Positions 1-48,647 of a DNA stretch of 64,000 nt are shown here, one piece after another. The notes beneath the pieces were generated by a model. The model was not told the DNA's origin. It did not search any database and saw nothing but the letters and a program-made list of their open reading frames with translations. Source of the DNA: Selaginella moellendorffii (taxonomy: Eukaryota; Plantae; Lycopodiophyta); NCBI RefSeq assembly GCF_000143415.4, contig NW_003314295.1, positions 1,659,950 through 1,723,949 on the forward strand, in the 5' to 3' direction. The first letter of the stretch is position 1, and each line of letters opens with the position of its first letter. A program made the position numbers and the translations under genes.

Positions 1-31
1 ACTCGTACAGATAGTTCTAAAGTTTGCACAG

Positions 32-259
32 GTTGAGTACTCGCCGGTTTCGTCGATCGAGAAAACACGGCAGATGATGCAAGAGTTCGTGGATCTCTGG
101 CAAGAGGCGATCTCAGCACAGTCCATGAGTGGACGTATCTCGCTCCTAGAACCAAATTTTGCCGAGTACGCGCTCTCAGATACTTATACTTGGCAGCACA
201 CTGCACTGCAGTACATTTTTTTGTTTGCTTACTTCCTGTCGCAATCCCAAAGAGCATGA
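32..259 (+). CDS. MED20: Mediator subunit 20, last exon (5' part lies outside window)
   Basis: AG acceptor at 30-31, then VEYSPVSSIEKTRQMMQEFVDLWQEA...EPNFAEYALSDTYTWQHTALQY*, matching the plant MED20 C-terminus (VEYxPISS...EF...NF.E..L.D.YT.QHTA). Confidence 0.8.
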   Translation, partial: VEYSPVSSIEKTRQMMQEFVDLWQEAISAQSMSGRISLLEPNFAEYALSDTYTWQHTALQYIFLFAYFLSQSQRA

Positions 260-299
260 TCGCAATCAACACATCTCTCTTCTAGTTCGAGGTGATTTT

Positions 300-3200
300 C
301 TTTCCTGCTGTCCAAGTATTAACATATATCGCTCCAGAACATGTATGTTAGTTAGAGGTTAGACAAAGCAATGTAAGGGGTATCATCTGATAGACTAGCT
401 AGACGCTACATCCACACACAAAGAGAAAGAATTCGCAACTGGTTAATGTTCTCAATGCATCCTGGAATCCTGATCATCTTAAACGGGAGTTCAAATCATT
501 TAAGGTTAGTGTTTGCAAAATTCTTGTTTGCTCCAGACCTGCTCACTAGATTACGACATTTTTTTAATACAATTATTGAAAATTTTATTATCAATGTCAC
601 ATTTAATAGACTTTCAAATGTTAAAATTTAACTTTGTGAGGGCCAAGTGTACGGCTACAATGCCATATATTAATATTAATGTAGTGGGATTTTGGTAGTT
701 GTCGGATTGATTTCAATTCAAACCACTTGCTTTTGTATATAAGTTAGGGTTTTTGGGCTAATTGATATGCACATTTTCTGTATTCCCTTTTCATATTCCA
801 AGCACTCACAATAGTTTTATTATAAAATAAATAAAAATTTAATTATAAATATAATTTATTAAATCATAACACATATAAAAATGTAAAAAGAAATTTTTTT
901 AGTTAAATACAGAATGCATTTTACCATATTGGCATTATAATCTCCTTGAAGAATCACTCATAGAAGCTACACACTATACAAACTCAAGCAAAAGTCGTGT
1001 TTGATATTAGGAAACTAGCATGAGATAGGTTAGATGCTAAGGGCACTCACTAAACCCTAAATACAAATTATATATATGTATCAAAAGAATATACTGATTT
1101 CCACATATAGTGCTCTCTATTGGGAAATTCATCTCAACATTAGTATAGATAGATAGTATAGATAGTATATGTCTAAAGGATAATAGGATGACCACAAGGA
1201 AACACTAGTGGTATAAGCATAGCCATAGTAAATTTATTTTCTAGCAATTTCAAGCACTCTAGAAAATCAATATTGAGCAAACAATCTTTAAATGGATCTA
1301 AGAATATATTATTGTGTTTTTTCTTGTGATATGTACTTTGTTTTCTATATTATAGAGCATTTTAGATAATGTGAAATTATACTAGGTATGTATTAGCAAA
1401 TTCTAATCATAGCTCATTTCTGGGATATCATGCTACAACTTTCATATATCTATTCTAAAGATTGGATATGAGTAAGCAATTTTAAAAACACTCAAAATAA
1501 CTAATGGATGCAAGATTTCTCAAAAAATTATGTACAAAACAAGAATAAGAAACATACATTTCCTTTTAACAACTAATGGACTATGTGATATTTAAATCTA
1601 AATATAACATATTTGATGATCATATAATTATTAATAGACACATGGGTTGATGAACTCAATACAGTGATGAGGCTCCATCCAAACCACTATCACCTTGAGC
1701 TTTAAAAAAAAACAAATCCAATAATATTAATAAAATAGAAAAAAAACCAATAAGGTTAGAGGCCTATTGATTTAATTTATGGCTACCTATATACCAATTA
1801 AAAATCCATACCTTTTGTTATGAAATCACTTGCTATTTTGTTTACTTTCAATTAAAGAATTGTCTATAAATCAGTTGTTATTCAATTGTAATTACCATTT
1901 TTTTTTTGTTATACAACTGTTTCACCAATATTGGCCTAGAATACACCACCAACTTTCATCTCTAGAAGATCAAATTTAGAGATACTATTAGTAAGATATT
2001 GGATATATGCTTCTCTTATATAAGACATTTGCAACTAAATATCTATAGCACATCATAAATTCTATGGTATTTGTTCTAAACTAGAGAATTATCTCCTTGT
2101 TTGGCATTTTTAACTCTAATCCTAGTCATTCTAAGCTCTTGCACCACTACAATAAATCCAGTCCTTTGACAATATAGTTAATCATCTATAATTTCCTTTA
2201 GATTGGCCCCTCCTTTTAGAAGAGCACGTATGATGCAATTCATATGCTGCCATAGCCCTCTCATCTTCTCAACGTGGGTGTGTTGCCCATGATCATGACT
2301 AACTTGATTAATAAATTGTTTAATGAGTGTTAAATTTCTCCTTGCCAAGAGGTTTGACCAAATAGCAATAGTAGAAACATTTGGATCAAGAAAAACCTAT
2401 TTGTATTACAAAATTTTGATGTTGCAAGAGATGAAATGGTTGCTTGAGCATTTAATAAAACTTTAGTAGAACTTTTGGTGGGATTATAACAATCTAAAAA
2501 GATGTGGAGTAGAAAAGCTTATTAAATACTTTCAATATCATTCCTCCTTATTAACTTGTTAAAGAATAAATATGGCATGTTAAAAACAAATATAAACTCA
2601 TTTTAAAATTTTTTTCCCTCTTTTAGGATCTTGTATTCGCATTTTGGTTCTTTTTCCCTTTTTTAATCAAATCCTTTATCATGGGAAAGTCAATCTAAAA
2701 AGCCCCAAAATAGCCTAGTAAATGAAGGTTTATTAAGGCTATTGCTAAAATGGTTTTCTATACATGATTTGGGCTTATAAAGATATCAAGAGAGCAATAT
2801 TGATAATTATGCCTTACTAAGCCTCCTCCATAGGTATTTGAGATAAAGCATTAAGAGTGTAGATTAAGTTGTTCTATTTATAATAGTCTCATCAATTAGG
2901 TGCCAAACCCACAAAATATATTATATTCAAGAGTTCTACATATTGACTTTAGACATGCAACTTACTTAATCTTTACTTCTTTAAAGATATTGTGATGTTT
3001 GATATGGTTCTCACAACTTTATTAAAAAAAGTTGGTAATCTTTATCATACTATAAAATCTAAAGGGTATAACACAACTTTGTAAAATTAAATGCATTAGC
3101 AAATTTATGCCTTAACCATTTGCATACTATCAAACATTGTGTAATATATTATATATCATCCACTTTTAAAAAGATGAACTATGTTTTTGCTTTTAAAAAA

Positions 3201-3470
3201 AAGTAAAAATTTAAATTTTTTAAAAAAGTAACTTTCAATAAAAATTTTTTTTTATACCTTTTATATGAAATAAAAAAGTAAAATACATAATTTCATATAT
3301 TGTTTTATATAATACATGCATATATATTTCTATACATATAAAAGAATATTCCTGACTATTTTAAATGCTTAGTGGGGAAGGAGATTGGGGAAAAAAATAT
3401 TATCTTTGTCCATTATACTATTAGTAAAATGGTATTTTAGTGAAAGAGTTACTATTGTAAAAAGAAAAAA
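300..3470. mobile_element. Highly degenerate AT-rich transposon-derived sequence
   Basis: Very AT-rich and CpG-poor with no intact ORFs. Faint minus-strand RNase H-like words (LDGAS ~1670-1683; IPRNE...FAN ~1393-1428). Confidence 0.35.
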
Positions 3471-3480
3471 AAAAAGGCTC

Positions 3481-4398
3481 CTATAAATAGTTATATTTGT
3501 TTTATCCACAAGATATTTACCACCACTTTGATAATCATCAATCCTTTGATATAAATGTTTGTTATATATATGGTACATAAGTTGGTATATTTCATCCCAC
3601 AAGAGATAAAGACTGCTTAAGATCATATAAGTCCACCAGTCATGAACACTAACAAGTGGTCCTTTTAAAATTGTAGCAATGGCAACTTATTACTTTGTGA
3701 AGAGATGAATTTCACAAATCTTAGTTTCATCAAAATTTGGGGCATGCAAGTTGCAAGGAGCTGTCTTCACTTGGTTAATTTTGGTTAGTGTCATAGCATC
3801 TTTGTAATTCACATATGGAAAATATAGTGGGTGATGTTTGTAGAGAACAAGCTTTGTTGGTTTGGTGCTTGTCTTCTGCTTGACTACCAAATAAACATTA
3901 TAACCCTTTAAGCCCAAAAGTTGATTGGAGTGGAGAATATCACTAACACCTATGCTCAATATAATAGTCATAGCCTTGTTTGTTCCCACAAGTAGTGCAC
4001 CACCCCCATATATTTTTGTAAACCAAAGAAGAATATATAAAAACTAAATGAATTATAAACAAGAGGCAATGGAGGGAGGAGAGTATGCACCTTGCAATTT
4101 ATAACTTTATTGCTATGACTCCCCTATATTAAGTTGTTGTGAGGCTCTACTTCTTTTTGAAAAGACCTATAGGGAACTAAAGCTCTTAAGTTCTCTTTCT
4201 CATTTGATAATCAAAGGAAAAGTTTATAGTTGCGGCAAAAGGAAAGTCTGGGTTGTGAATAAATATTATAATGACATATAGGAAATAACCATGGATGAGA
4301 AGTTTGAGCTTGATGCATACAAGACATCTACTACTCTGGGTAAATCTCTTGAGACTACTATTATTCCATGAATAATATAAATAGAGAAATATGTGTAT
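3481..4398 (+). repeat. Copy 1 of a duplicated segment; carries an internal inversion at 3735-4105 relative to copy 2
   Basis: 3481-3734 aligns directly with 5341-5560. 3735-4105 is the reverse complement of 5561-5928. 4106-4228 aligns with 5929-6052, and 4230-4398 with ~11543-11708. Confidence 0.85.
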
Positions 4399-5340
4399 GG
4401 TGTTTATTCTGCCAAGAGTGCTACATAATAACTATATAAATGTCTGGGTTCTTACAATATCAAAATAAAAGCATTGGTATTTGTGCCAAATCATTTTATC
4501 TTTTGTTTTAGTCTAAACTTTTATTAATTGATGTTGTGCTCATATATGATGGATTCAGTCAATGCTTCAAGGCCTTCTTTTCCTTTTTCTGCCTCTTGTG
4601 CTTGATTTTGAGCCTCCAGTATTTGTTTTTTTACTAATGGAATTTCTTGTAAAGTTCATAAAAGAGAGAGGGAGAGAGAGCATCACAAGTACATATGGTA
4701 GCTATTGTTGTTAATGGTTGTTTCAATTAAATAAGTTTTTTTTTTCACTTTTATACTATGTAATTAGATTTGTAGAAAATGCCTCTTATGGGCTTATCTC
4801 TTGTATATAGCCCACTACAAAGAGTATCCTTTTGTGATGCAAAGTATTTACAAAATTAACAAAGTTTCAAACAATTTATCCTTTATTTTATTCATGTGTG
4901 TAGGGAGAAGAAGAATTTGGTTTTAAGTGTAAGGGATTTTTTCAATAAGGAGATATACATGGTGTATAAGTTTATTTTATGGATTCGTGGAACATAATGA
5001 TTAGGCATATCAAGAATGGCTTCCTAGAATTCTATACTATCACTATTTGCAAAGTTGATAATGCAAAGGTGTTTTTGAATGTGGACTCACATGATTACTG
5101 TATGCAAGCTAGTAACCATAAGAAGTGTGTCCAATCCTTTTACGGAATTTAATTATAAATCTTAATAATGTTAGCAACATGCCTTAAGAGTTTAAATGAA
5201 GTACTAGAATGCATACTCCAAACTTAAGTAGGCAAAGATGAGGTTTGAAAAAATCTAAAAGAATAAAGTTTTAACTTGAAATTGAACTATGAAAACAAGA
5301 AAAAAAATTAACAAATTCTTTTAGCTATGGGTTCTCAACC

Positions 5341-6052
5341 CTATAAATGGTCACGTTTAATTATCCATGCACCACCCTCTGATATAAATGTTGGTTGTGC
5401 ATATCATATTGGCATATCTCATCCCATAAAAGATAAAGAGAGCGTGAAATAATGCAAGGCCACTTGGTCACAAATGCAAGTAAGTGATCCTCTTGAAACT
5501 GTAGTAATGGCAACTCATTACTTTGTGAAAATAAATTTTACAAATCTTAGTTTCACCAAAGCTATAAATTGTAGGGTGTATGCTCTTCCCCCCACCACCT
5601 CTTACTTGTAGTTCTCTTGATTTTTATATATTCCTCTTCGGTCTGCAAAAATGTATGGGGTGGTGCATTGCATATGAGAGTAAGCAAAGTTATAACTATT
5701 GTGTTGAACATAAGTGTTAGTAATGTTCTTAACTCTAATTAGCTCATGGGCTCAAAGGGTTATGACTTTTATTTGGTGGTCAAGTTGAAGACAAGCACCA
5801 AGTCAACAAAGCTTGTTCTCTACAAAGGTCACCCACCATATCCTCTATAAGTGAATTACAAGGATGCCATGACACTAATTGAAATTAGCCAAGTGAAGAC
5901 AATTCTTTACAGCCTACGTGCCCCAAATCCTTGTTGCTATAACTCCCACACTAGGTTGTTGTGAGGCTTTGCTTCTTTTTGAGATGATTTATGAAGAACC
6001 AAAGCCCCCTCAAGTTCTTTTTATCATTTGATAATCAAAGAAGAAGCTTGTG
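5341..6052 (+). repeat. Copy 2 of the duplicated segment, 5' part (interrupted by the Gypsy element)
   Basis: Shares e.g. ctataaat, atggcaact.attactttgtgaa, caaatcttagtttca, gttgttgtgaggct and catttgataatcaaag with copy 1. Confidence 0.85.
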
Positions 6053-6173
6053 TGTTATGTGCCAGCTTGAAAAGCTTAAGGGTATATTAAGGCATGTTAG
6101 AGTAAAAAACTTAACCTACCTTAGGGCTCATAAAGAGACTAGATCTTTGTCTTTTTGTACAAGATTATAATAT

Positions 6174-6185
6174 TGGTATCAAAGG
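6174..6185 (+). other. Primer-binding site (initiator tRNA-Met type)
   Basis: tggtatcaaagg versus canonical TGGTATCAGAGC, immediately after the 5' LTR. Confidence 0.7.
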
Positions 6186-8850
6186 AGTTGGTTGCAATGG
6201 CTAACCAAGCTAAATGTTAGAATCCTATTGTTGATGGTGGTGTGGATAATGGTGTTGATTGAGTTGTAGAGGTTTAGACCATTCAAGATGCAAAAGGGAC
6301 AAAGAAGTAGAAGTTTTTTGTGAAAAATTATAGACAAGGTCGTCATCATTGTAATGAGTTTGGACACTATAAAACTGATTGTGTACAGTTGAAAAACAAG
6401 TAATAAAGCAAAAAGATTGTCCAATCTTCTACTGACGGTAAGTTAGATATTAAACAGTTGCAAACTTTGTAGCGTGAGGATGATAAGGAAGACCATTCTG
6501 ATCAAAAGAAGAGGCTTTTGATCATTTTTTGTCAATTTAATTGTATGTAGAATAAAATGAAGCTCGATGACACTTGTGTATCAGTTTTAATGCTAGAAGG
6601 CATTTTCTGTGGCAGTCTAGTGTCAATTTTACTAAATAATGGGAGTGATGACAACTTTTTTTCAGCAAAGTTTGTTCAGGAGTATGGCCTAGTAGTACGA
6701 GGTGTTCTTCCATACACAATGGAAGGTGCAGCTAACTCTACTTAGCATTTCAATGCTTATGTAAAAGGGTTGAAAGTATTTGTTAGTAAAACTACACTTG
6801 TGGAGACTTTTTATCTCATAGATATTCATTGTGTGGATCTCATTTTTATGATGCCATAGTTGGTGAAAGTGAATACAGAGATAAAATGGAATATTAAGCA
6901 TATCTCACTAAAGTACAGTAGCATTAAAGATGTGTAGTTTGGAGAGGGAACCTCCAGTTGTTATGCTCTCTACTATATTTTGTAAGTGGATTTGTCGTAA
7001 TGGAAAAGCATTTTCAAGTTACTTGTTGTTTATTCATGATTTAGGGGATTAAGACACTTGTGGGGGAGAGGTAGCAATATAGGTTGTATTCGAAAAGTTT
7101 TCTAATGTTTTTCCATTTGAACTTCCTTATATGTTACCTTTATTATGAGGTATGGAGTATAGGATTACGTTGGAGCTAGAGATATGGCCAATTTACTAGC
7201 ATCCATTTAAGTTGAGTATGAGGAGCAAAAATTTCAACAATAAGTTAATGAGTTATTTAAGTTTGGATTTATTCAGCTAAGTAAGTTTTTGTTTCGTGCT
7301 TCAATCTTGCTCATGAAAAAAAAGGACAGTTCAATATGGATGTATATTAATTATTATACCTTAAACAAAAAGACAGTGAAGGATAAGATGTCGATGCTGT
7401 ATATGGATGGTATCTTAGACAAGATTAGTGAAACACGAGTGTTTACCAAGATTTATTTGAAAGTGGATATCATCAAATTGCAATAAATGATGCATCTATC
7501 TCCAAGATGGCATTCAACATAAGCTTCACGCGTTTTGAGTTTATAGTTATATTATTTGATTTGATGAAAGTACTAGCCACATTTACTCGGTTGATAATGG
7601 AGGTATTTGGGTGTTATCATCATGAGTTTGTGGAGATTTTCTTAGAGAATATTTTTGTTCTTAGCAAGAATATAAAGTATAAAATGCATTTGCACAAGGT
7701 TCTTTTGTTAGTATGTGATAACAAACTTTATGCAAAGAAGAGCAAATATAAATTTGCAAAGTCAAAGGTGAAATTTTTATGCCATATTGTGATATCTAAA
7801 GGTGTCAAGATAGATCCAAGGAAGGTGGATATGGTGGAGAACTAGCCTACACTGACTTCAATGATTAAGTTATACAGCTTCTTAGTTATTACTGATGTTT
7901 CTAGCATAAATTTGCAAAGGTGGCTATTTCCTTTGACATGGTTGTTACGCAAGAATATGCCATTCAAATGGAAGAAGCCATATGAGGATAGTTTTGTGGC
8001 ATTAAAATGGTTGTTGAGCAAGGCTTTTACATTATTGATCCATCAAAACTTTAGAAAGTGACATGTGATGCGAATGGTTGTTGAGTAAGGCTCTAGTGCT
8101 TTGTATTGTTGATCTATCAAAACTTTACAAAGTGACATATGATGTGAGTGGTTATGCATTAAGAGGAATTTTCATACAAGAGGGATAACCTATTGCATAT
8201 GAGAGTCGAACTTTGAATCCTATGGACCAATGCTATTCCACATATGAGCAAGAGTTACTCTCCATTGTTTATGTTTTGTGGATATCGCAACACTATCTTT
8301 ATAGTGTTGACAAATCACAAACTTTTTGTGTATCTTTTCATACAAAAAGAGTTAATTACTAGATAAGCTCATTGGATGGTCAAACTTATGGAGTTTTGGG
8401 AGTTTCTTATTAAGCTTTATTTGGGAAAATCAAATGTGGTGGCAAATACTTTATCTCATATTCATTATGTGATGACATTATAAACACAATCTTTTCATCA
8501 TTTAAGTAAAGTGGTTAGCAAGTTTGGGAAATTGGTTGAGCATGCTCAGGCTTAAAGTGGTTTCTTTGCGAACCTAGATAGAAGCCCCTTTCTCATTGGT
8601 GAATAGGATTCTTTTATAATAATCATATATATTTGCCACAAGTGGATGTATTGATTACTCAAGTTTTATTCCATTATCATGATTGTTTAGAGGGTAGTCA
8701 TTTTGGGGGGAAGAAGACATATAAACTGATTAACTACAAATTTTATTAAAGGAATATAAAGGCTAATATCCTCAAGTATTATAAATCATGCAAGCTCTGT
8801 CAATGAGTAAAGGTGCTACAAGAAAAGCCTAAAGGACTTTTGCAACCTTT

Positions 8851-10394
8851 TGTGAGATATAAATCCTAAGCCCTAAAGTGGAGCTGAAAGGGTGTCATAT
8901 GGTAGTGGTTGAAATGGAAGTCCAAGAAGCATAATATATTTGAACCAAAAGCTCTAACTTGGAAAGTCGAGAATATAAGTGGAACTTTGAACAAAGTGCT
9001 TAAAGAATGAGTACGAAGTAATTAGTGAATGAGTCTTTAAAAAGGGACATAAGAAGGATTAACACATGGCAAGTGTTATGATACACGGAAGTGTCAGAAA
9101 CGAGCCAAAAAAGAGTCCAAGATGGACCCGAGATGGAGTCCAAGATAGACCCAAGATAGAGTTTGATATGGATCCGAGATAAATTGAAGATGGAATTTGA
9201 GATGGACACGAGATAGACCTAAGATGGAGTCCGAGGTCAAATCTAAGGTTGAGGTGGAGACCGAGTCTAAGACCGAGACCAAGACCGAGACCGAGACCAA
9301 AGCTAAAACTGAGACCAAAATTGGGACTGAGATCGAGATTAAGTCCGAGTCCAAGTCTAAATCCCAGTGTAAGTTCAAGTCCAAGTCTGAGTTTGAGGGT
9401 GAAAGCCTAAAGTGATTGTCTCTCAAACCTTAAGGGGTTTGGTGAGCTCTAAAAATATAGTAGGGGGAGAATTCTAGTGGAGCCAGTTTGATCAGGAAAG
9501 GTTAATATGACCAAGGAAAACTATACCCATGTGTTAGGTGATGATATAACCATTGAAAAGTCTAAGGCTAGAGTGAATATAAATATATAAATGAGGTAGC
9601 TTAGTAAAGTGTTCAAAAACCGACTCTAGTTCCTTCGGGAAATCAAATAGTCAATGCTCCCAATCTAAGTGTGGGTGGCACTATTTACTTGGATACTTGG
9701 CATGGCTCATCGAAACCTCGCTCTAGCCACATGGCTAGGGCACCTAAATGTAGAAGATGGGGAGAGTACCCACGAGACTCGCGTAGGGCCATGGTGTTTT
9801 AAAATGTTATCCCAAACTCTTAGACTATAGAAAGGAAGAGGATTAATCCTCTAGTGTAGTGACCAAGGATACGGTCATATGGTGAGGAAGTTTTAGAAGT
9901 CAATAAGACTTAATGGTTGGGCTTTTGGGTCTTGACCTAGTAGTGGTATTGTTGAGTAAAGCCATAGATGGAGAAAAACTTGGTGGGAATGAAAGAAGGA
10001 ACATTGAGGAAGGGTGTTCCTTATGTCTCCGGGCATCCTAAGGGTGCTAAGGTGTGGTCAAAGGATGACCACTCATAAATGGATGGCCCAGTCTTTGAAA
10101 AATGGGATTGTGATGAAGGTGGTCTTAGAGTACCAATGTGACAAAAGGGTAAATGGGCATGGCCTTAGCATAATGGATTGATATGTCAGTGGTACCTTTA
10201 GGTGTCAGTCATGGGGTTGGACATGTGGAGCACTTGGACCAAGTGCAAAAGTTAAGTGGCATAGATGCTATTCATGGGGCTAGCATGTCCCCAAGTAAAG
10301 AATAAAGCTTATGGAATTCATAAGCAAGGTTGCTCTAAATGGTTAAATGTGTGGTTAAGTGAATAAAGTAGAATGGAAAAATTAATTTCTTACA
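8851..10394. mobile_element. Nested solo-LTR-like insertion inside the Gypsy integrase
   Basis: Begins TGTGAGA and ends TCTTACA. Flanked by a perfect 5-bp direct repeat CCTTT (8846-8850 and 10395-10399). Removing it restores the GLLQPLPIP codons. Confidence 0.88.
9100..9400 (+). repeat. Degenerate hexamer tandem array (ccgaga/ccaaga/ccgagt/ccaagt)
   Basis: e.g. gaccgagaccaagaccgagaccgagaccaa; generates the spurious ETKTKTETETK ORF. Confidence 0.8.
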
Positions 10395-11542
10395 CCTTTA
10401 CCTATTCCTTAGAGCTATTGGTGTAGTATCTCTATGGACTTCATCACTTATTTGGCACAAACATAAGGTCAAAAGGAGTAAGTATGGATTATTTGATGAA
10501 GTATGTGTGGTTGTTGGCTTTTCAAAAGACTATTATTATCTCATACTTGGTTGTGATCTACTTGAAGAAAGTTTTTCTTGATTTTGGTTTGCTGAAGGAT
10601 ATTGTTAATAATCAAAACTCAAAGTTCACTAATGGAATTTGGAAGAGCTTTACAAAGGTTATGCAAGTGATATTTGAAACTCTTGGATGAAGATCATCTT
10701 TAGACAAATGGGCAAATTGAGTGTGTGAATCATGTGGTGGAGGATATACTACATTGTAGCATTAGTCAAAGGTAGTTTGTTAGTGCAATTTTCTTGTAAT
10801 AATAGCCAATATAGTGGAACCAAGTTAAATCCTTACTTTACCATATTTGGAAAGCATGTGGAGTTATGATTGTATTTGAGTAAGGATATTCAAGATAAAC
10901 TTGATTTCAAGGCAACTAATCTGGCCACAAAACTTGATGAGATTTTGGTGGTGCGTAAATGAAATTTGCAAATGCTTAGGATAGAGTAGAGAAGATTGTT
11001 AATGAGTATTGCAAATTCTAGGAATATAAAGTGGGTGATCTCATATTTGTGTAAGTGATCTTTCCGTCAAATGAGTGGTAAAACACCTTGGTACCTTTAT
11101 AGAATGAGAAGAGTGATAAACTTTCTCATTAATATGTTGGTCCATATGAAGTGCTAGAGTGGGTAAAACAACTTATCGAGTGCAATTGCCAATTGGGGTG
11201 AAAATTCATCTAGTATCTTATATTAGCCAATTAAATCTCAGAGTGAAAGGCCTCTTTATGGACCAAGAGCTTAAATAAGGTTCCCTACAAAGGGTGATCA
11301 CCAGTATAATTTGTCCTTGGGATAAAGACTTTGTTGAGGGGGAAGAATTGTTAGATGCCAGCTTAACCATATGGTCATCGTGGGTCAAAAGGAATATTAA
11401 GGTATATTAGGGTAAAGAATTTAACCGCAGCAGCTTTTGAAGTAGATTAAGGGTGGTTAGGTGGTGAGGAACCTTAAGAGGAAGCATAGTATAGTATAGG
11501 GAGACTAGATCTTTATCTTTTTAGCTGAATCATAAGATTATG

Positions 11543-11708
11543 GTAGCGAGGGAAAGTCTAAGTTGTGGATAAGTACTGCAATGAGGTATAGAAAATCACC
11601 GTGGATGAAAAATTTAACCCTAATGCACAAAAGACATTTACTACTTTAGGTAAATCTCTTGACACTACTACTATTCCATGAATAATATAAATAAGAAAAT
11701 GTGTGTAT
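11543..11708 (+). repeat. Copy 2 of the duplicated segment, 3' part
   Basis: ggaaagtct...ggtaaatctcttga.actacta.tattccatgaataatataaata matches 4241-4385. Confidence 0.85.
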
Positions 11709-12208
11709 AGAATGAACTTTTGTAAATATGGTCTGCTTGGATGAGTGTTGCCACCAGACTCTCACCAATGGCTTCCACCTCTTCCACCTCTTTGACTACT
11801 GTCCTCTGCAATCAACATTTCAAGGCAGACATAGCAAGTTCCTTGTCTCAAAGACCTCATTGTTTGCCCACTATTTCTGAGGTAGTAGGTTCCAATCTTT
11901 TGTTTGATAAGTCCTCTTCATGCTAGTGATGTTTGCCCACCTTTTTTTTGCATCCATGGTTGCCAAGCTTCAAAGCGAGTGGCTTGTTCCAGCTTCTGGC
12001 AAGGCTCACAAATTCACATGTCTCCTTGGCCAGATAAATTCTAGATTAAAGGGATTTCATCTTGTGGGATTGAAAATGTTACAGGCTCTAGGTGGTGCTG
12101 AACCCCCAAGTTGAGATGGAAGCTATGGGCTACTAGCTTGTACATGCCGGTCCTCTCACACTTCTGTATCTTGCACAGCAATTTGGTGAGGACCAATGGT
12201 GTGGGGTT

Positions 12209-18752: not shown

Positions 18753-18781
18753 GAATATGCCACGCGGGTGCAAGAATATGC
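18753..18781. promoter_or_regulatory. Pair of P1BS elements upstream of the BT gene
   Basis: GAATATGC at 18753-18760 and 18774-18781. Confidence 0.5.
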
Positions 18782-30762: not shown

Positions 30763-30856
30763 GGATATTCCTTAGAATGTTGCTTGACGGAATATGCGTC
30801 AACGCTGGCGGTATATTCTGCGCGGGTTTTTCGCGCCGTATATACCCCGCATATGC
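30763..30856. promoter_or_regulatory. Cluster of five P1BS (GNATATNC) elements
   Basis: GGATATTC 30763, GAATATGC 30790, GTATATTC 30811, GTATATAC 30838, GCATATGC 30849. Confidence 0.75.
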
Positions 30857-31118: not shown

Positions 31119-31629
31119 ATGGCGGAGGATCCCAAATATGCCTATCCCGCGCAGCCGGCGTATGGCTATCCCCCCCAACAAGGTATGCGTAATCTTCCCT
31201 CTTGTCTCTCTTGTTCTTCCAGCATTTCCATTCGCCGCTAGAAATCTTTTTCTTGGAGTTTGTGGCTTTCGATTCCTACGATCTTGAAATTTACTCTCTT
31301 GCGGATTTGTCTCCAGGGTATCCGCCACAGGGCTATCCCCCGCAAGGCTACCCGAATCAAGCGCAGGGAGGATACTACCAGCAGCCACCGCCAGTAGTTC
31401 CACCGCCGCAGTATCAACAGCAAGCTCCTCCGCGCAAGAACAACAGCAATTTCTTGACTGGATGGTAAGCTTTCGGTCGATCGCTCGAGCTTTTCCATTT
31501 TCTCATCTGGATTGGATGGAGCCTGACACCATCGATTTTTAATTTCTTCCCTGTAGCTTGGCCGCGATGTGCTGCTGCTGCCTCTTGGATGACTGCTGTT
31601 GCGACCCCACTCTCTTGATCATCGACTGA
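31119..31629 (+). CDS. CYSTM (cysteine-rich transmembrane module) protein, 3 exons
   Basis: MAEDPKYAYP..., GYPPQ repeats, and C-terminal FLTGC|LAAMCCCCLLDDCCCDP. Confidence 0.9.
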
Positions 31630-44710: not shown

Positions 44711-45354
44711 GAATGATTGACACACACACGAGATTCACGAGGAGAGGCTTGCTTTATATTCTTTCGCAATAAGATCCCCCGAGAACTTTGGAAGAACACG
44801 AAGAAGAAAACACACACACACACACACCCAAGGTTGGTCTGTTCGTTCGTTTTGTTCCCCCGAATTGGTGGAGCAACAAAGAAATCCCTGTAGCATAAAC
44901 TTTCTTTTTTTCTTCTCCTGCTCCATCATAAGCTAGTCTTTTTCTCTGTATTTTTTCTTCCTTTTGGATCCAAGTTTTGATGATAAAAAAAAAAGAGATT
45001 TTTTTTGCTCTGGTTTCTCCGCCGAGAAGAAGAAAAAAAAAGAAAAAAAGAAATCTTTCAGGAGAGAAAGAACTTAGCTTAGCTTTTGATGCATCGATTT
45101 CATCCAGTCCAACAACGAGCGAGACTTTTTTGCCTCCACGTCGTTCGTGGTGGTGATGGAATTGAAGTTGTTTCTTCCACCTTGATTGATTATTTATGCC
45201 ATGCGCAGTCCTAGTACCTGAATCCTGATAGATAGATAGACGAGTCACTTCTTCCGTCAGGAAACACATTAAAGAGACTGGCAGTAGAATTGATTGGTAC
45301 CTGAGAGGAAAGTGTGAGCTTGCCACGCCTCGCTCGCTCGCTCACTACGTTTTC

Positions 45355-46392
45355 TTACTCGGACGACTTCTTGAGGAAACCGGCCTCTTCATCCTCCTCC
45401 TCCTCGGCCTCCTCTTCCTTGTCCCCCAAACTCTCCATCGGCTTGGACACCACCACCTCGGATGGCTGGCTACTCGGCTTCGGCATGGCCGTCGACTGCT
45501 GGTACAAAACCCCGCCAACAATCGTGAGCAGCAAGAACAAGATCCCGACGGTGCTGGCGTGCTTGTCCCAGATGAGCACGTTGATAATCACCGTGAGCAG
45601 CTTGTTCACCACCCCGGTGACTGTAAATGCGGTGGCCGAGATGGCCTTCCTGGCCGCGAAGCCGAAGAAGCTGATGGCCAGGCCAAAAACGCACGAGAGC
45701 GCCACCGAGAAGACGGCCTGGAACTGGAACAGGCTCTCCCAACTCGCCCGGGCCACCTCCGAGTACTCGCCAGTGACGATCCAGAAGAATGGAGCCATGG
45801 CGAGCGAGAGGAGATTGTTGTAGTAGACGAAGCCCCAGGTGTTGAGTCCCAGGTTGGTGACCATATGCTTGATGTACACCATCTCGGTGGTGATGGTGAC
45901 GAGGTAGGCGGCGGCCCACGAGTAGGCGGTGACCGAGAAGGCCGAGTCGGTGAGCACGTAGCCGATGGCGCCGCCGAGGATGACGAGCAGCGCCGCGAGC
46001 GTGTAGCGCGAGGGGAACTGCTGGCGGCGGAAGAAGGTGTCGGCGATGGCGACGAGCAGCGGCGTGGAGGAGCGGAAGACGATGAAGGTGTCGACGTTGG
46101 CGTGCTTGAGGAGGTGCGTGTTGGTGAAGATGGCGAGGTAGAAGACGAGCGCGGCGGGGAGGAAGCGCTTGACGGTGTCCCAGGCGAGGGCGTCGTGGTG
46201 GAGGAGGCCGGCCAGGCCCAGGAGGTGGACGCCGCCGGCGCTGGTGAGGTACTGGAGCGCCGTGAGGAGGCTAGGGTATGGGAAGTAGGTCACGGCGTAC
46301 TTGTTGATCACCGCCAGGAGGCTCGAGCACAGCGCGTAGCCCAGCACCAGCAGCGCCGTCGTCGACAGGACCGCGCCGCTGTTCTTCATCAT
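45355..46392 (-). CDS. GONST4: Golgi GDP-fucose transporter (GONST4/GFT1-like), intronless
   Basis: GYALCSSLLAVINK, LTALQY, NVDTFIVFRS, AYLVTITTEMVYIKHMV, YNNLLSL, ISATAFTVTGVVNK. Confidence 0.9.
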   Translation of the reverse strand: MMKNSGAVLSTTALLVLGYALCSSLLAVINKYAVTYFPYPSLLTALQYLTSAGGVHLLGLAGLLHHDALAWDTVKRFLPAALVFYLAIFTNTHLLKHANVDTFIVFRSSTPLLVAIADTFFRRQQFPSRYTLAALLVILGGAIGYVLTDSAFSVTAYSWAAAYLVTITTEMVYIKHMVTNLGLNTWGFVYYNNLLSLAMAPFFWIVTGEYSEVARASWESLFQFQAVFSVALSCVFGLAISFFGFAARKAISATAFTVTGVVNKLLTVIINVLIWDKHASTVGILFLLLTIVGGVLYQQSTAMPKPSSQPSEVVVSKPMESLGDKEEEAEEEEDEEAGFLKKSSE

Positions 46393-46671
46393 CGCGCCGC
46401 GCCTCTCCTCTCGCCGCCGCCCCTACCTAGTGCCGTGTGACCTCCACCAAGCGCGCGCGCGAGATCCGCCGATCCGGAAGAGCTGAAAGAGATCGAATCG
46501 ATCGCCTAGCCCCGCCGCCGGTCGCGAATCCGGAGGGAAATCTCTAGATCCCGGTGCCGCGCCGTGAGCGTCGTGCGCGCGAGGAGCTCGCGGCCAACAA
46601 GAAATCGCTGCTACTTTCAAACTGATAGACAATGTAGGTCTTCTTACTTTTTTGATTTTCTCGTTGGCGGA

Positions 46672-46814
46672 GAATATGCTCCAAGCCGCCATGGCATATT
46701 CCTATAGCGGTAGAATATCCTATAATGCGTCAGAATATACCAGAATATACCCCCTCGAGAGTATATTCTAGGTGCGGTAGAATATCTTAAATAATATTCC
46801 TCTGGAGTATATTC
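46672..46814. promoter_or_regulatory. Cluster of seven perfect P1BS (GNATATNC) elements plus two 1-mismatch copies
   Basis: GAATATGC 46672, GCATATTC 46694, GAATATCC 46713, GAATATAC 46733, GAATATAC 46743, GTATATTC 46761, GTATATTC 46807. Near matches GAATATCT 46780 and TAATATTC 46792. Confidence 0.8.
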
Positions 46815-46860
46815 TTCGAAATGAAGATGATCATCCTTTTTGGAGCCCTTTGGCGTGTGG

Positions 46861-48271
46861 ATGACGCAATTTCTGGAATCGTTCGAGGTGTTCGATCTCG
46901 CGCTGGGTAAGCCGCCGCTCCACTGCCTCCCCTGCAATGCGAGCGTCGGGGACGCCATTGCGATGGCGCGGGAGCTGGGAGTGGCGGAGATTAGCGTGTG
47001 GGACGCCAATCTCGCCAATTGCCTGGGCGTGGTCAACAATCTCGACGTCCTCTGCTTCCTCGCCGCGGATCACACCCTGCTGTGCGATCTGGAGGCCGCG
47101 CTCGCGCGTCCAATCGCCGGGCTGGTGCACAGGAGCTGGATCCAGCGCGTGGATCTCCACGAAAGGTACTTTTATCTATTTGGTAGATAGATTATTCCTT
47201 CTTCTACATGAATTGGATGTTCCACTATCGTGTAGACTGTCCAAGGCGCTGGAGCTCGTGATCAAGGGCGTGCAGTACCTCATTGTCCCTCTCCCCAAGA
47301 GATCTCGATCCACTCGCGCGATGGAGTTCGAGAGGAACAGTAGCAGCGGATCCTCGCGCTGGCCTCGCAAGGAAGTGTGCTGGATCAGCCAGGAGGCCGT
47401 GATGCGCTTCCTCATGAGCTGCATAGCCGCGTTTTGCCCGCTTCCACTCTTCACCATCGAGGAGCTCGGGATCATCAACCGCAGCTTTGCCTCCATCCAG
47501 CACGAGGACCCTGCGATCGAGGCGATCCAGATCATCCACCAGGCCTCCCAGGCGATGAGCGCAGTAGCAATCGTCGTCCCGGCAACTCCATCACCATCTC
47601 CTTCATCGGCGTCTTCCACTACCGAGAACCAGAGGAAGCTCAAGCTGGTGGGCGATATCTCGTCGTCCACGCTCCGCCGCCACGACGAGAATTTCGCCGC
47701 CGTCGCCGCGGCTCTCGCCACACTCTCCGCCGCCGACTTCCTCTCGTACGTCCGCGGAAGCAACAAGCGTAGCTCCAAGATCCTGGGAAAGTTGATCGAA
47801 ACTCGTCTCGCTCAAAAGGTGGCGGCGGCGGCGGCGGCGGCGGTGGCGGACGAAGATCAAGTTGCAGGAAAACCCCCGACGCCGCTGGATTCCTGCGAGG
47901 AGTCCTCGGACTCGGAGCAGGACTCCCATAGATCTGGAGGACTGACTTCGAGCTTCCAAAACTCTGGGAGCCGCGGCTGCTTGACGTGCCGGCCGTGGAG
48001 CTCGCTGGCGGCGGTCATGGCGCAAGCACTGTCGCACCAATGCGGCTACATCTGGGTGACGGAGTCAGAGAGCGAGAACACGGTGGTGGGGATTGTGACT
48101 TACGTTGATATGATCCGTGTGCTCGTCAAGAAGCTGGAAAAGGTGGGGCGCCTTGGATCCAGCCAGAAATTGTTCTCGTCGACGCCAAAGCTGGTCACGC
48201 GGCCGGATCAAAGCAGCCAGCAGCCACCACTCGTTCTGCCCGCCGACCACTTGAAGAGCAAGCATTCGTGA
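46861..48271 (+). CDS. CBS domain protein, CBSX5-like, 2 exons (46861-47165, 47237-48271)
   Basis: EV.DL.LGKP.L, ISVWD, DVLCFLA, GVQYLIVP, CWISQE.V.RF, LVGDIS, LATLSA.D, C..WSSL.AVMAQAL.H...Y.WV, VGIVT. Confidence 0.88.
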
Positions 48272-48647
48272 AAAAGAGGAGCTGTATACATTTGTGCGTG
48301 TGTATATCTTGTTCGTTCGCTATAAATTTGACAAAGTTTTCAGTAATATCTGGAGGAACTATGTATACCTGTGTCGACTGTCAAAATGTCGGCGATACAA
48401 TTGCCAAAAGGCCTGTGCATACGAAAATGGAAATTGATAATATCGGGAAAAGAGAAAAATAGAGAGAGGGAAAAGGCTAACCTGGTATTGTCCTGCGAAG
48501 AGACTAGCTGTGCCTTGTACCTACGCATGTGGGCAAGTTCCTTTCGGCTAAGAACTGACAAGCATCGAGAAGCTTGACTTTGTCTTCTTCTTCTTCTTCC
48601 ACAAATCGACCAACTTTGAGCTCTCTGTCTCGTTTTTCATTTTACAG

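What the first reader, a model, noticed from the sequence alone, without database searches (positions are those of the whole stretch)
46672..46814. Exceptional P1BS array (7 perfect + 2 near) in the divergent GDP-fucose transporter / CBS promoter
Seen: about half of this 143-bp stretch consists of GNATATNC motifs, with starts spaced 22, 19, 20, 10, 18, 19, 12 and 15 bp, mostly near helical multiples. Local duplications are visible (cagaatatac x2, gcggtagaatatc x2, gagtatattct x2), but the variable positions differ between copies, suggesting selection on the motif rather than simple repeat expansion. The array ends 46 bp before the CBS ATG and ~280 bp from the transporter ATG. Established: PHR1-type MYB-CC dimers bind P1BS, and CBS domains bind adenylates. 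Inference: a high-avidity phosphate-starvation switch driving a putative adenylate-sensing protein, and perhaps Golgi fucosylation; I know of no description of such a link.
Basis: partly seen in the sequence, partly recalled or inferred. Interest (0 to 1): 0.8.

Follow-up and report, generated by a model that had tools for sequence, protein, structure and literature searches.

The report
Dense P1BS array in shared promoter
In the spike moss Selaginella moellendorffii, nine closely packed copies of the known phosphate-starvation DNA motif fill the short promoter shared by a GDP-fucose transporter gene and a CBS-domain gene; the array is real and far beyond chance, but it is specific to this lineage and its response to phosphate is untested.

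Summary
There are 7 perfect GNATATNC sites plus 2 one-mismatch sites in 143 bp (46672-46814). Local shuffles give a mean of 0.19 and a maximum of 3 in 20,000. The window is Selaginella moellendorffii.

RNA contigs from four studies place the GFT1 mRNA 5' end at about 46612-46625 (- strand) and the CBSX5-like mRNA 5' end at about 46807-46840 (+ strand). The array therefore fills nearly all of the ~180-bp space between the two transcript starts.

All nine sites share GAATAT, and 7 of 9 carry the palindromic C at position 8, against 7 of 43 elsewhere. This fits a dimeric PHR/MYB-CC site. None is GAATATTC, the NIGT1 site.

- Helical phasing is not significant.
- Part of the array arose by local duplication.
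- The other haplotype has lost one site and shows no extra conservation.
- Eight related promoters (the Selaginella paralog, four CBSX5-like genes, three GFT1 orthologs) have 0-1 P1BS.
- Both genes are expressed in ordinary RNA runs.
- No paper links either gene to phosphate.
- Two smaller P1BS clusters lie in the same window.

The scan had already noted this gene pair on another piece (s1-375028).

Verdict: a probable PHR-type bidirectional promoter, a new member of a known kind. Phosphate control is inferred, not shown.

The parts
46672..46814 (.). Array of 9 P1BS-type sites. Seven are perfect GNATATNC, at 46672, 46694, 46713, 46733, 46743, 46761 and 46807. Two are near-sites, at 46780 and 46792. 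The GAATAT half-site points +,-,+,+,+,-,+,-,-.
46731..46751 (.). 10-bp tandem repeat CAGAATATAC, 2.1 copies, carrying sites 4 and 5. In the other haplotype a 10-bp indel leaves site 4 as TCATATAC.
46707..46793 (.). Local duplicated units. These are GCGGTAGAATATC twice, a 20-nt family of 3 copies at 75-80% identity, and a 27-nt family at 78%.
45355..46392 (-). GFT1/GONST4-type GDP-fucose transporter CDS: single exon, 345 aa, Pfam TPT.
46393..46625 (-). GFT1 5'UTR of about 220-233 nt. RNA contigs end at 46612, 46619 and 46625. It has no upstream ATG.
45224..45299 (-). Intron in the GFT1 3'UTR. The joint 45223 to 45300 appears in RNA contigs of two runs.
46807..46860 (+). CBS gene 5'UTR. RNA contigs begin at 46807, 46812, 46830 and 46840.
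46821..46910 (+). Upstream ORF of 29 codons in the CBS leader. It is out of frame with the main ATG and overlaps it. It is kept in the other haplotype.
46861..47165 (+). CBS-domain (CBSX5-like) gene, CDS exon 1.
47166..47235 (+). 70-nt GT..AG intron, spliced out in the RNA contigs of all four runs.
47236..48271 (+). CBS-domain gene, CDS exon 2 with the stop codon. The 446-aa product is identical to SELMODRAFT_443590 (P0001).

Best explanation
The array is the upstream activating region of a ~180-bp bidirectional promoter in Selaginella moellendorffii. It is a homotypic cluster of up to nine palindromic P1BS sites, most likely bound by dimers of PHR1-subfamily MYB-CC (GARP) factors. Because the sites are palindromic and lie between the two transcript starts, occupancy would activate both GFT1 (- strand) and the CBSX5-like gene (+ strand).

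In the canonical pathway, InsP8-SPX blocks PHR binding when phosphate is sufficient, and starvation releases it. The array would then give low or basal expression in Pi-replete tissue and strong joint induction under starvation.

Shown here: the motifs, their excess over chance, their dimer-type form, their position between the two mRNA 5' ends, and the identity of the genes.

Inferred: which factor binds, and any response to phosphate.

The array grew partly by local duplication and is specific to this lineage.
For: - Motif excess: 7 perfect and 2 near sites in 143 bp, against a maximum of 3 in 20,000 local shuffles.
- Dimer-type form: all nine sites share GAATAT, and 7 of 9 have C at position 8 against 7 of 43 GAATAT hexamers elsewhere in the window. 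This points to a palindromic dimer site rather than a monomer half-site.
- Not the NIGT1 variant: none of the nine is GAATATTC. PMC11082045 gives GNATATNC for PHR1 dimers and GAATATTC or GAATC for NIGT1. The same paper shows PHR1- and NIGT1-subfamily proteins with conserved domain structure in S. moellendorffii.
- Position: RNA contigs of four runs from four studies put the GFT1 5' end at 46612-46625 and the CBS 5' end at 46807-46840.
- Allelic copy: the array is present at the allelic locus L001 with 8 of 9 sites identical.
- Precedent: a synthetic promoter with three copies of the two-P1BS EZ2 enhancer works bidirectionally and responds to Pi, and its strength rises with copy number (PMC5398999).
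Against: - No binding or Pi-response data exist for Selaginella.
- No paper links CBSX5 or GFT1 to Pi starvation.
- Both genes give RNA contigs in ordinary runs of several studies, so the promoter is active without known starvation.
- Related promoters have 0-1 P1BS. These are the Selaginella CBS paralog, the CBSX5-like genes of Diphasiastrum, Sphagnum, Chenopodium and rice, and GFT1 of Marchantia paleacea, Ceratodon and Populus.
- The haplotypes differ as much inside the array (5 substitutions in 143 bp) as across the whole promoter stretch compared (16 in about 490 bp), and one site is degraded in the other haplotype.
- PMC5398999 itself states that presence of P1BS is not enough for Pi responsiveness.
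- The MYB-CC family also has members with roles outside phosphate signalling (own knowledge).
Confidence: 0.5

Rival explanations
1. The array is a constitutive promoter-proximal element. The same sites are bound by MYB-CC or other GARP factors that phosphate does not control, and P1BS-type clusters are a common way of building promoters in this genome. The array then sets the basal, shared expression of two housekeeping-type genes and is not a starvation switch.
For: - Both genes are transcribed in RNA runs of several studies.
- The array occupies nearly all the space between the two transcript starts, leaving little room for other upstream elements.
- Three separate P1BS clusters lie in promoter-side positions in this one 64-kb window. 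They stand next to unrelated genes: a BTB/BACK gene, a CYSTM gene and this pair.
- An unchecked note of the scan (s1-388241) says such clusters mark many unrelated housekeeping promoters in this genome.
Against: - Only 19 of 9369 notes on this genome mention P1BS. Several name typical Pi-response genes (PHR-like, G3P permease, inositol-pyrophosphatase-type Nudix), which fits a specialised regulon (unchecked leads).
- The sample of promoters I could examine is small, about 11 genes.
- Basal expression is also expected for PHR targets.
Confidence: 0.27
2. The array is mostly a neutral by-product of local duplication. One to three founder P1BS sites were multiplied by slippage or unequal exchange of units of 10-67 bp. 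The extra copies add little function.
For: - There is a 10-bp tandem repeat.
- Families of 13-27 nt with 75-88% identity, flanks included, are present.
- The halves 46695-46726 and 46762-46792 align with each other.
- The haplotypes differ by a 10-bp indel that removes one site, and there is no excess conservation between haplotypes.
Against: - The N positions and orientations differ among copies, and four different 8-mers occur in both orientations.
- The four clean substitutions inside the array all fall outside the 8-mers, although p is only about 0.06.
- The second cluster in the window (30763-30856) shows no obvious duplication yet also has five sites.
Confidence: 0.12
3. The sites serve other readers of AT-rich cores. 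Candidates are NIGT1/HHO repressors, KANADI-type GARP monomers (GNATA[A/T]), evening-element MYB-related factors, or TBP at TATA-like sequences.
For: - All sites contain GAATAT, which fits the KANADI-type half-site (own knowledge).
- Site 7 (AGAATATCT) is one mismatch from the evening element.
- TTAAATAATATT at 46787-46798 and site 9 lie about 10-33 bp upstream of the observed CBS contig starts, so they could act as a TATA box.
Against: - None of the nine sites is GAATATTC, and no GAATC lies in the array (PMC11082045).
- The C at position 8 in 7 of 9 sites, against 16% elsewhere, is not needed by a monomer or by TBP.
- Only one site resembles the evening element.
Confidence: 0.08

Closest known systems
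P1BS (GNATATNC) elements in promoters of PHR1 target genes in Arabidopsis and rice
   Same: The 8-bp palindromic motif is the same. The sites are promoter-proximal. Multiple copies are known to strengthen the response (PMC11082045, PMC5398999).
   Different: Nine sites in 143 bp is well above the two sites of the natural PLDZ2 EZ2 enhancer described in PMC5398999. The organism is a lycophyte with no binding or expression data. Neither target gene is a known Pi-starvation gene.
Synthetic 3xM-EZ2 bidirectional Pi-responsive promoter (Oropeza-Aburto et al. 2017, PMC5398999)
   Same: A tandem set of P1BS sites (6) sits between two divergent minimal promoters and drives both directions. Strength rises with copy number.
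   Different: That promoter is engineered and tested in Arabidopsis. This one is natural, has 7+2 sites with varied N positions and orientations, and is untested.
NIGT1/HHO binding sites (GAATATTC, GAATC)
   Same: The GARP-type core GAATAT is shared. PHR1 and NIGT1 can share GAATATTC sites (PMC11082045).
   Different: No site in the array is GAATATTC, and no GAATC lies within it.

Membership tests
P1BS / PHR1-regulated promoter | Presence of the GNATATNC palindrome | tested here: met
   There are 7 perfect and 2 one-mismatch sites. 7 of 9 GAATAT hexamers have C at position 8, against 7 of 43 elsewhere.
P1BS / PHR1-regulated promoter | Sites lie in the promoter, upstream of the transcription start | tested here: met
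   RNA contigs end at 46612-46625 (GFT1) and begin at 46807-46840 (CBS). The array lies between them. Contig ends only approximate the true 5' ends.
P1BS / PHR1-regulated promoter | Bound by a PHR1-subfamily MYB-CC dimer | not testable with these tools
   Only indirect support: PHR1-subfamily proteins exist in S. moellendorffii (PMC11082045).
P1BS / PHR1-regulated promoter | Transcript induced by phosphate starvation in a PHR-dependent way | not testable with these tools
   No Selaginella Pi-starvation data were found. The run conditions are coded.
GFT1/GONST4 GDP-fucose transporter | Close full-length similarity to characterised GFT1 and a TPT-type nucleotide-sugar transporter domain | tested here: met
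   Pfam TPT at 6.4e-15. 66-74% identity over 86-100% of the length to proteins named GDP-fucose transporter 1 or GONST4. Substrate was not tested.
CBSX5-like CBS-domain protein | CBS domain above the Pfam threshold and best similarity to CBSX5-like proteins | tested here: met
   Pfam CBS at 30.1 bits, above the cut-off of 24. NCBI names it CBSX5. Hits include CBSX5-like proteins. Adenylate binding was not tested, and there is no solved relative.
Dispersed repeat / transposon fragment | Further copies at unrelated positions | tested here: inconclusive
   No copy other than the allelic one was found in about 93 kb of Selaginella DNA held. The whole genome could not be searched.

The most novel reading that the evidence does not exclude
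Dense homotypic P1BS arrays are a lineage-specific way of building promoters in Selaginella. MYB-CC factors would have been recruited as general promoter-proximal activators of many unrelated genes, including essential ones such as GFT1. Phosphate (InsP8-SPX) status would then tune a broad part of the transcriptome directly at core promoters, rather than a specialised starvation regulon.
Probability: 0.15. Interest if true: 0.6.

Novelty: new member of a known kind. Interest (0 to 1): 0.33.

Why it matters
If the array is a working PHR target, it would be a natural counterpart of engineered multi-P1BS bidirectional promoters. It would also tie Golgi GDP-fucose import and an uncharacterised CBS-domain protein to phosphate status in a lycophyte. 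That offers a simple test of how site number sets the strength of the response. Because the link is absent from the eight related promoters checked in this and seven other plant species, it is more likely a local rewiring than a conserved pathway.

Tried and rejected
- Helical phasing: rejected.
- Conservation in orthologous or paralogous promoters: none found in eight promoters. The Taxus locus gave no DNA.
- Footprinting between haplotypes: the two are 95% identical, which is too close. The array is no better conserved than its flanks.
- MITE or dispersed repeat: the 31-nt inverted arms are only 71% complementary and consist largely of the motif itself. No other copy lies in the DNA held.
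- Heat-shock element reading (GAAnnTTC): each site has only one GAA or TTC half, so it was rejected by inspection.
- NIGT1 reading: there is no GAATATTC or GAATC in the array.
- Literature searches for CBSX5 or GFT1 with phosphate starvation, and for Selaginella Pi-starvation data, found nothing usable.
- A solved-structure relative of the CBS protein: none.
- I could not fetch canonical Selaginella Pi-starvation genes (SPX, PHT1, PHR) for comparison, because no tool-given query sequence was at hand.

Full report
**Observation.** The stretch 46672-46814 holds seven perfect GNATATNC sites, starting at 46672, 46694, 46713, 46733, 46743, 46761 and 46807. It also holds two one-mismatch sites, GAATATCT at 46780 and TAATATTC at 46792. 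The whole window has 26 perfect sites against 11.4 expected, and none of 100 shuffles reached 26. In 20,000 dinucleotide-preserving shuffles of the 143 bp alone the mean was 0.19 and the maximum 3. Local AT-richness (39% GC) therefore does not explain the count. The distances to the two ATGs are right.

**Organism and genes.**
- The spliced CBS gene has its ATG at 46861, a 70-nt GT..AG intron at 47166-47235 and its stop codon ending at 48271. It encodes 446 aa identical to SELMODRAFT_443590 of Selaginella moellendorffii, which NCBI names CBSX5.
- The full protein passes the Pfam CBS threshold, 30.1 bits against a cut-off of 24. No solved relative was found.
- The divergent single-exon ORF 45355-46392 (- strand, 345 aa) has a TPT domain. 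It is 66-74% identical to proteins named GDP-fucose transporter 1 or GONST4 from liverworts to angiosperms.
Substrate and adenylate binding remain untested.

**Position relative to the transcripts.** I laid contigs of four runs from four studies on 45000-48600.
- The runs are listed only as probable RNA. All four splice out the 70-nt intron, so they hold RNA.
- GFT1 contigs end at 46612, 46619 and 46625, giving a 5'UTR of about 220-233 nt with no upstream ATG.
- CBS contigs begin at 46807, 46812, 46830 and 46840.
- The array therefore fills almost all of the roughly 180 bp between the two mRNA 5' ends. It spans about -47 to -190 for GFT1 and about -135 to +8 for the longest CBS contig.
- Contig ends only approximate true starts.
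- Both genes are represented in ordinary runs, so the promoter is active without any known starvation. The run conditions are hidden from me.

**Nature of the sites.**
- When oriented on the stronger half, all nine sites read (A/G)GAATAT-N-C. Seven have A before the G, and seven have C at position 8.
- Among 43 other GAATAT hexamers in the window, outside the three clusters, only seven have C at position 8.
- The full palindrome is thus favoured. This fits a dimeric reader such as PHR1-subfamily MYB-CC proteins rather than a monomeric GARP half-site.
- PMC11082045 gives GNATATNC for PHR1 dimers and GAATATTC or GAATC for NIGT1. None of the nine sites is GAATATTC and no GAATC lies in the array.
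- The same review shows PHR1- and NIGT1-subfamily proteins with conserved domain structure in S. moellendorffii.

**Claims that did not hold.**
- Helical phasing is not supported. The best period is 9.75 bp with R 0.66, which 57% of random arrays of the same span reach.
- The argument for selection on the motif is weak. Families of 13-27 nt are repeated with 75-88% identity including their flanks, and the two halves of the array align. Part of the array therefore grew by local duplication.

**Comparison of the two haplotypes.**
- The allelic locus on scaffold GL377591.1 (L001) has the same gene pair and a promoter about 95% identical.
- The promoter stretch compared, about 490 bp including the array, shows 16 substitutions. 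Five of them lie in the 143-bp array, so the array is no better conserved than its flanks.
- Four clean substitutions inside the array fall outside the 8-mers (p about 0.06).
- A 10-bp indel plus one substitution turns site 4 into TCATATAC in that haplotype.
- Eight of the nine sites are identical in both haplotypes.

**Conservation elsewhere.** P1BS counts in the region upstream of related genes were as follows.

| Gene | Species / locus | P1BS upstream | Region checked |
|---|---|---|---|
| CBS paralog (P0007) | Selaginella, both haplotypes (L002, L003) | 0 | 1.5 kb |
| CBSX5-like | Diphasiastrum (L004) | 0 | 1.5 kb |
| CBSX5-like | Sphagnum fallax (L005) | 1, at -1126 | 1.5 kb |
| CBSX5-like | Chenopodium quinoa (L006) | 0 | 1.5 kb |
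| CBSX5-like | Oryza sativa (L007) | 0 | 1.5 kb |
| GFT1 ortholog | Marchantia paleacea (L008) | 0 | 3 kb |
| GFT1 ortholog | Ceratodon (L009) | 0 | 3 kb |
| GFT1 ortholog | Populus (L010) | 0 | 3 kb |

The divergent pairing of the two genes was not seen at the other species' loci. The array is therefore a Selaginella-lineage feature. No copy of the array other than the allelic one occurs in the roughly 93 kb of Selaginella DNA I held. The whole genome could not be searched.

**Context in this genome.**
- The same window has two further clusters. One has five sites in 94 bp (30763-30856), upstream of a CYSTM-type gene with its ATG near 31123. The other is a pair of AGAATATGCC at 18753 and 18774, upstream of a BTB/BACK gene on the - strand.
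- Outside the three clusters the window has 12 sites, which is what chance gives.
- Earlier notes of the scan, unchecked, list P1BS clusters at PHR-like genes, a G3P permease neighbour and a Nudix gene. One note says clusters mark many housekeeping promoters.
- Note s1-375028 describes this same gene pair on another piece, probably the other haplotype that I aligned here.
- These leads point both ways, towards a Pi regulon and towards a general promoter element. Only a genome-wide count can decide.

**Literature.**
- No paper in the library links CBSX5 or GFT1 to phosphate starvation.
- No Selaginella Pi-starvation data set turned up.
- The closest known system is the engineered 3xM-EZ2 promoter (PMC5398999). 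It places six P1BS sites between two divergent minimal promoters and gives Pi-dependent expression in both directions, with strength rising with copy number.
- The same paper warns that presence of P1BS alone does not ensure Pi responsiveness.

**Verdict.**
- The best reading (confidence 0.5) is a PHR-type MYB-CC binding array that forms the shared upstream region of a bidirectional promoter for GFT1 and a CBSX5-like gene, with Pi control inferred.
- The main rival (0.27) is a constitutive promoter element not controlled by Pi.
- Lesser rivals are neutral duplication (0.12) and other readers of the AT-rich core (0.08).
- It is a new member of a known kind. It is notable for its density and for filling the whole space between the two transcript starts, but it is lineage-specific and untested.

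Noticed in passing
window 30763-30856: A second P1BS cluster of five perfect sites in 94 bp (GGATATTC, GAATATGC, GTATATTC, GTATATAC, GCATATGC). It starts 34 bp after the stop codon of the upstream gene (30729) and lies about 270-360 bp before the ATG of a CYSTM-type gene (about 31123).
   Followed up: partly
window 18753-18781: Two identical AGAATATGCC sites 21 bp apart, upstream of a BTB/BACK (probably BTB-TAZ) gene on the - strand.
   Followed up: partly
window 46821-46910: A 29-codon upstream ORF in the CBS gene leader, out of frame with the main ATG and overlapping it. It is kept in the other haplotype with one residue changed. Only transcripts starting near 46807-46812 would contain it. 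Contigs starting at 46830 and 46840 would not.
   Followed up: partly
window 45224-45299: A 76-nt intron in the 3'UTR of the otherwise intronless GFT1 gene, seen as a joint in RNA contigs of two runs.
   Followed up: no
window 48104-48319: RNA contigs that carry the splice joints of the - strand midasin (MDN1) gene reach back to 48104. That is about 170 nt inside the 3' end of the CBS coding region (stop codon ends at 48271). Convergent overlapping transcripts are possible, but contigs cannot prove it.
   Followed up: no
window 1-12000: The first 12 kb are much more AT-rich (27-42% GC) than the gene-dense remainder (45-63% GC), and no ORF of 170 aa or more lies there.
   Followed up: no
L002 5859-5877 versus L003: A pair of P1BS sites lies just downstream of the CBS paralog in one haplotype scaffold and is absent from the other. 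The other scaffold also has different called genes downstream, so the haplotypes differ in structure there.
   Followed up: no
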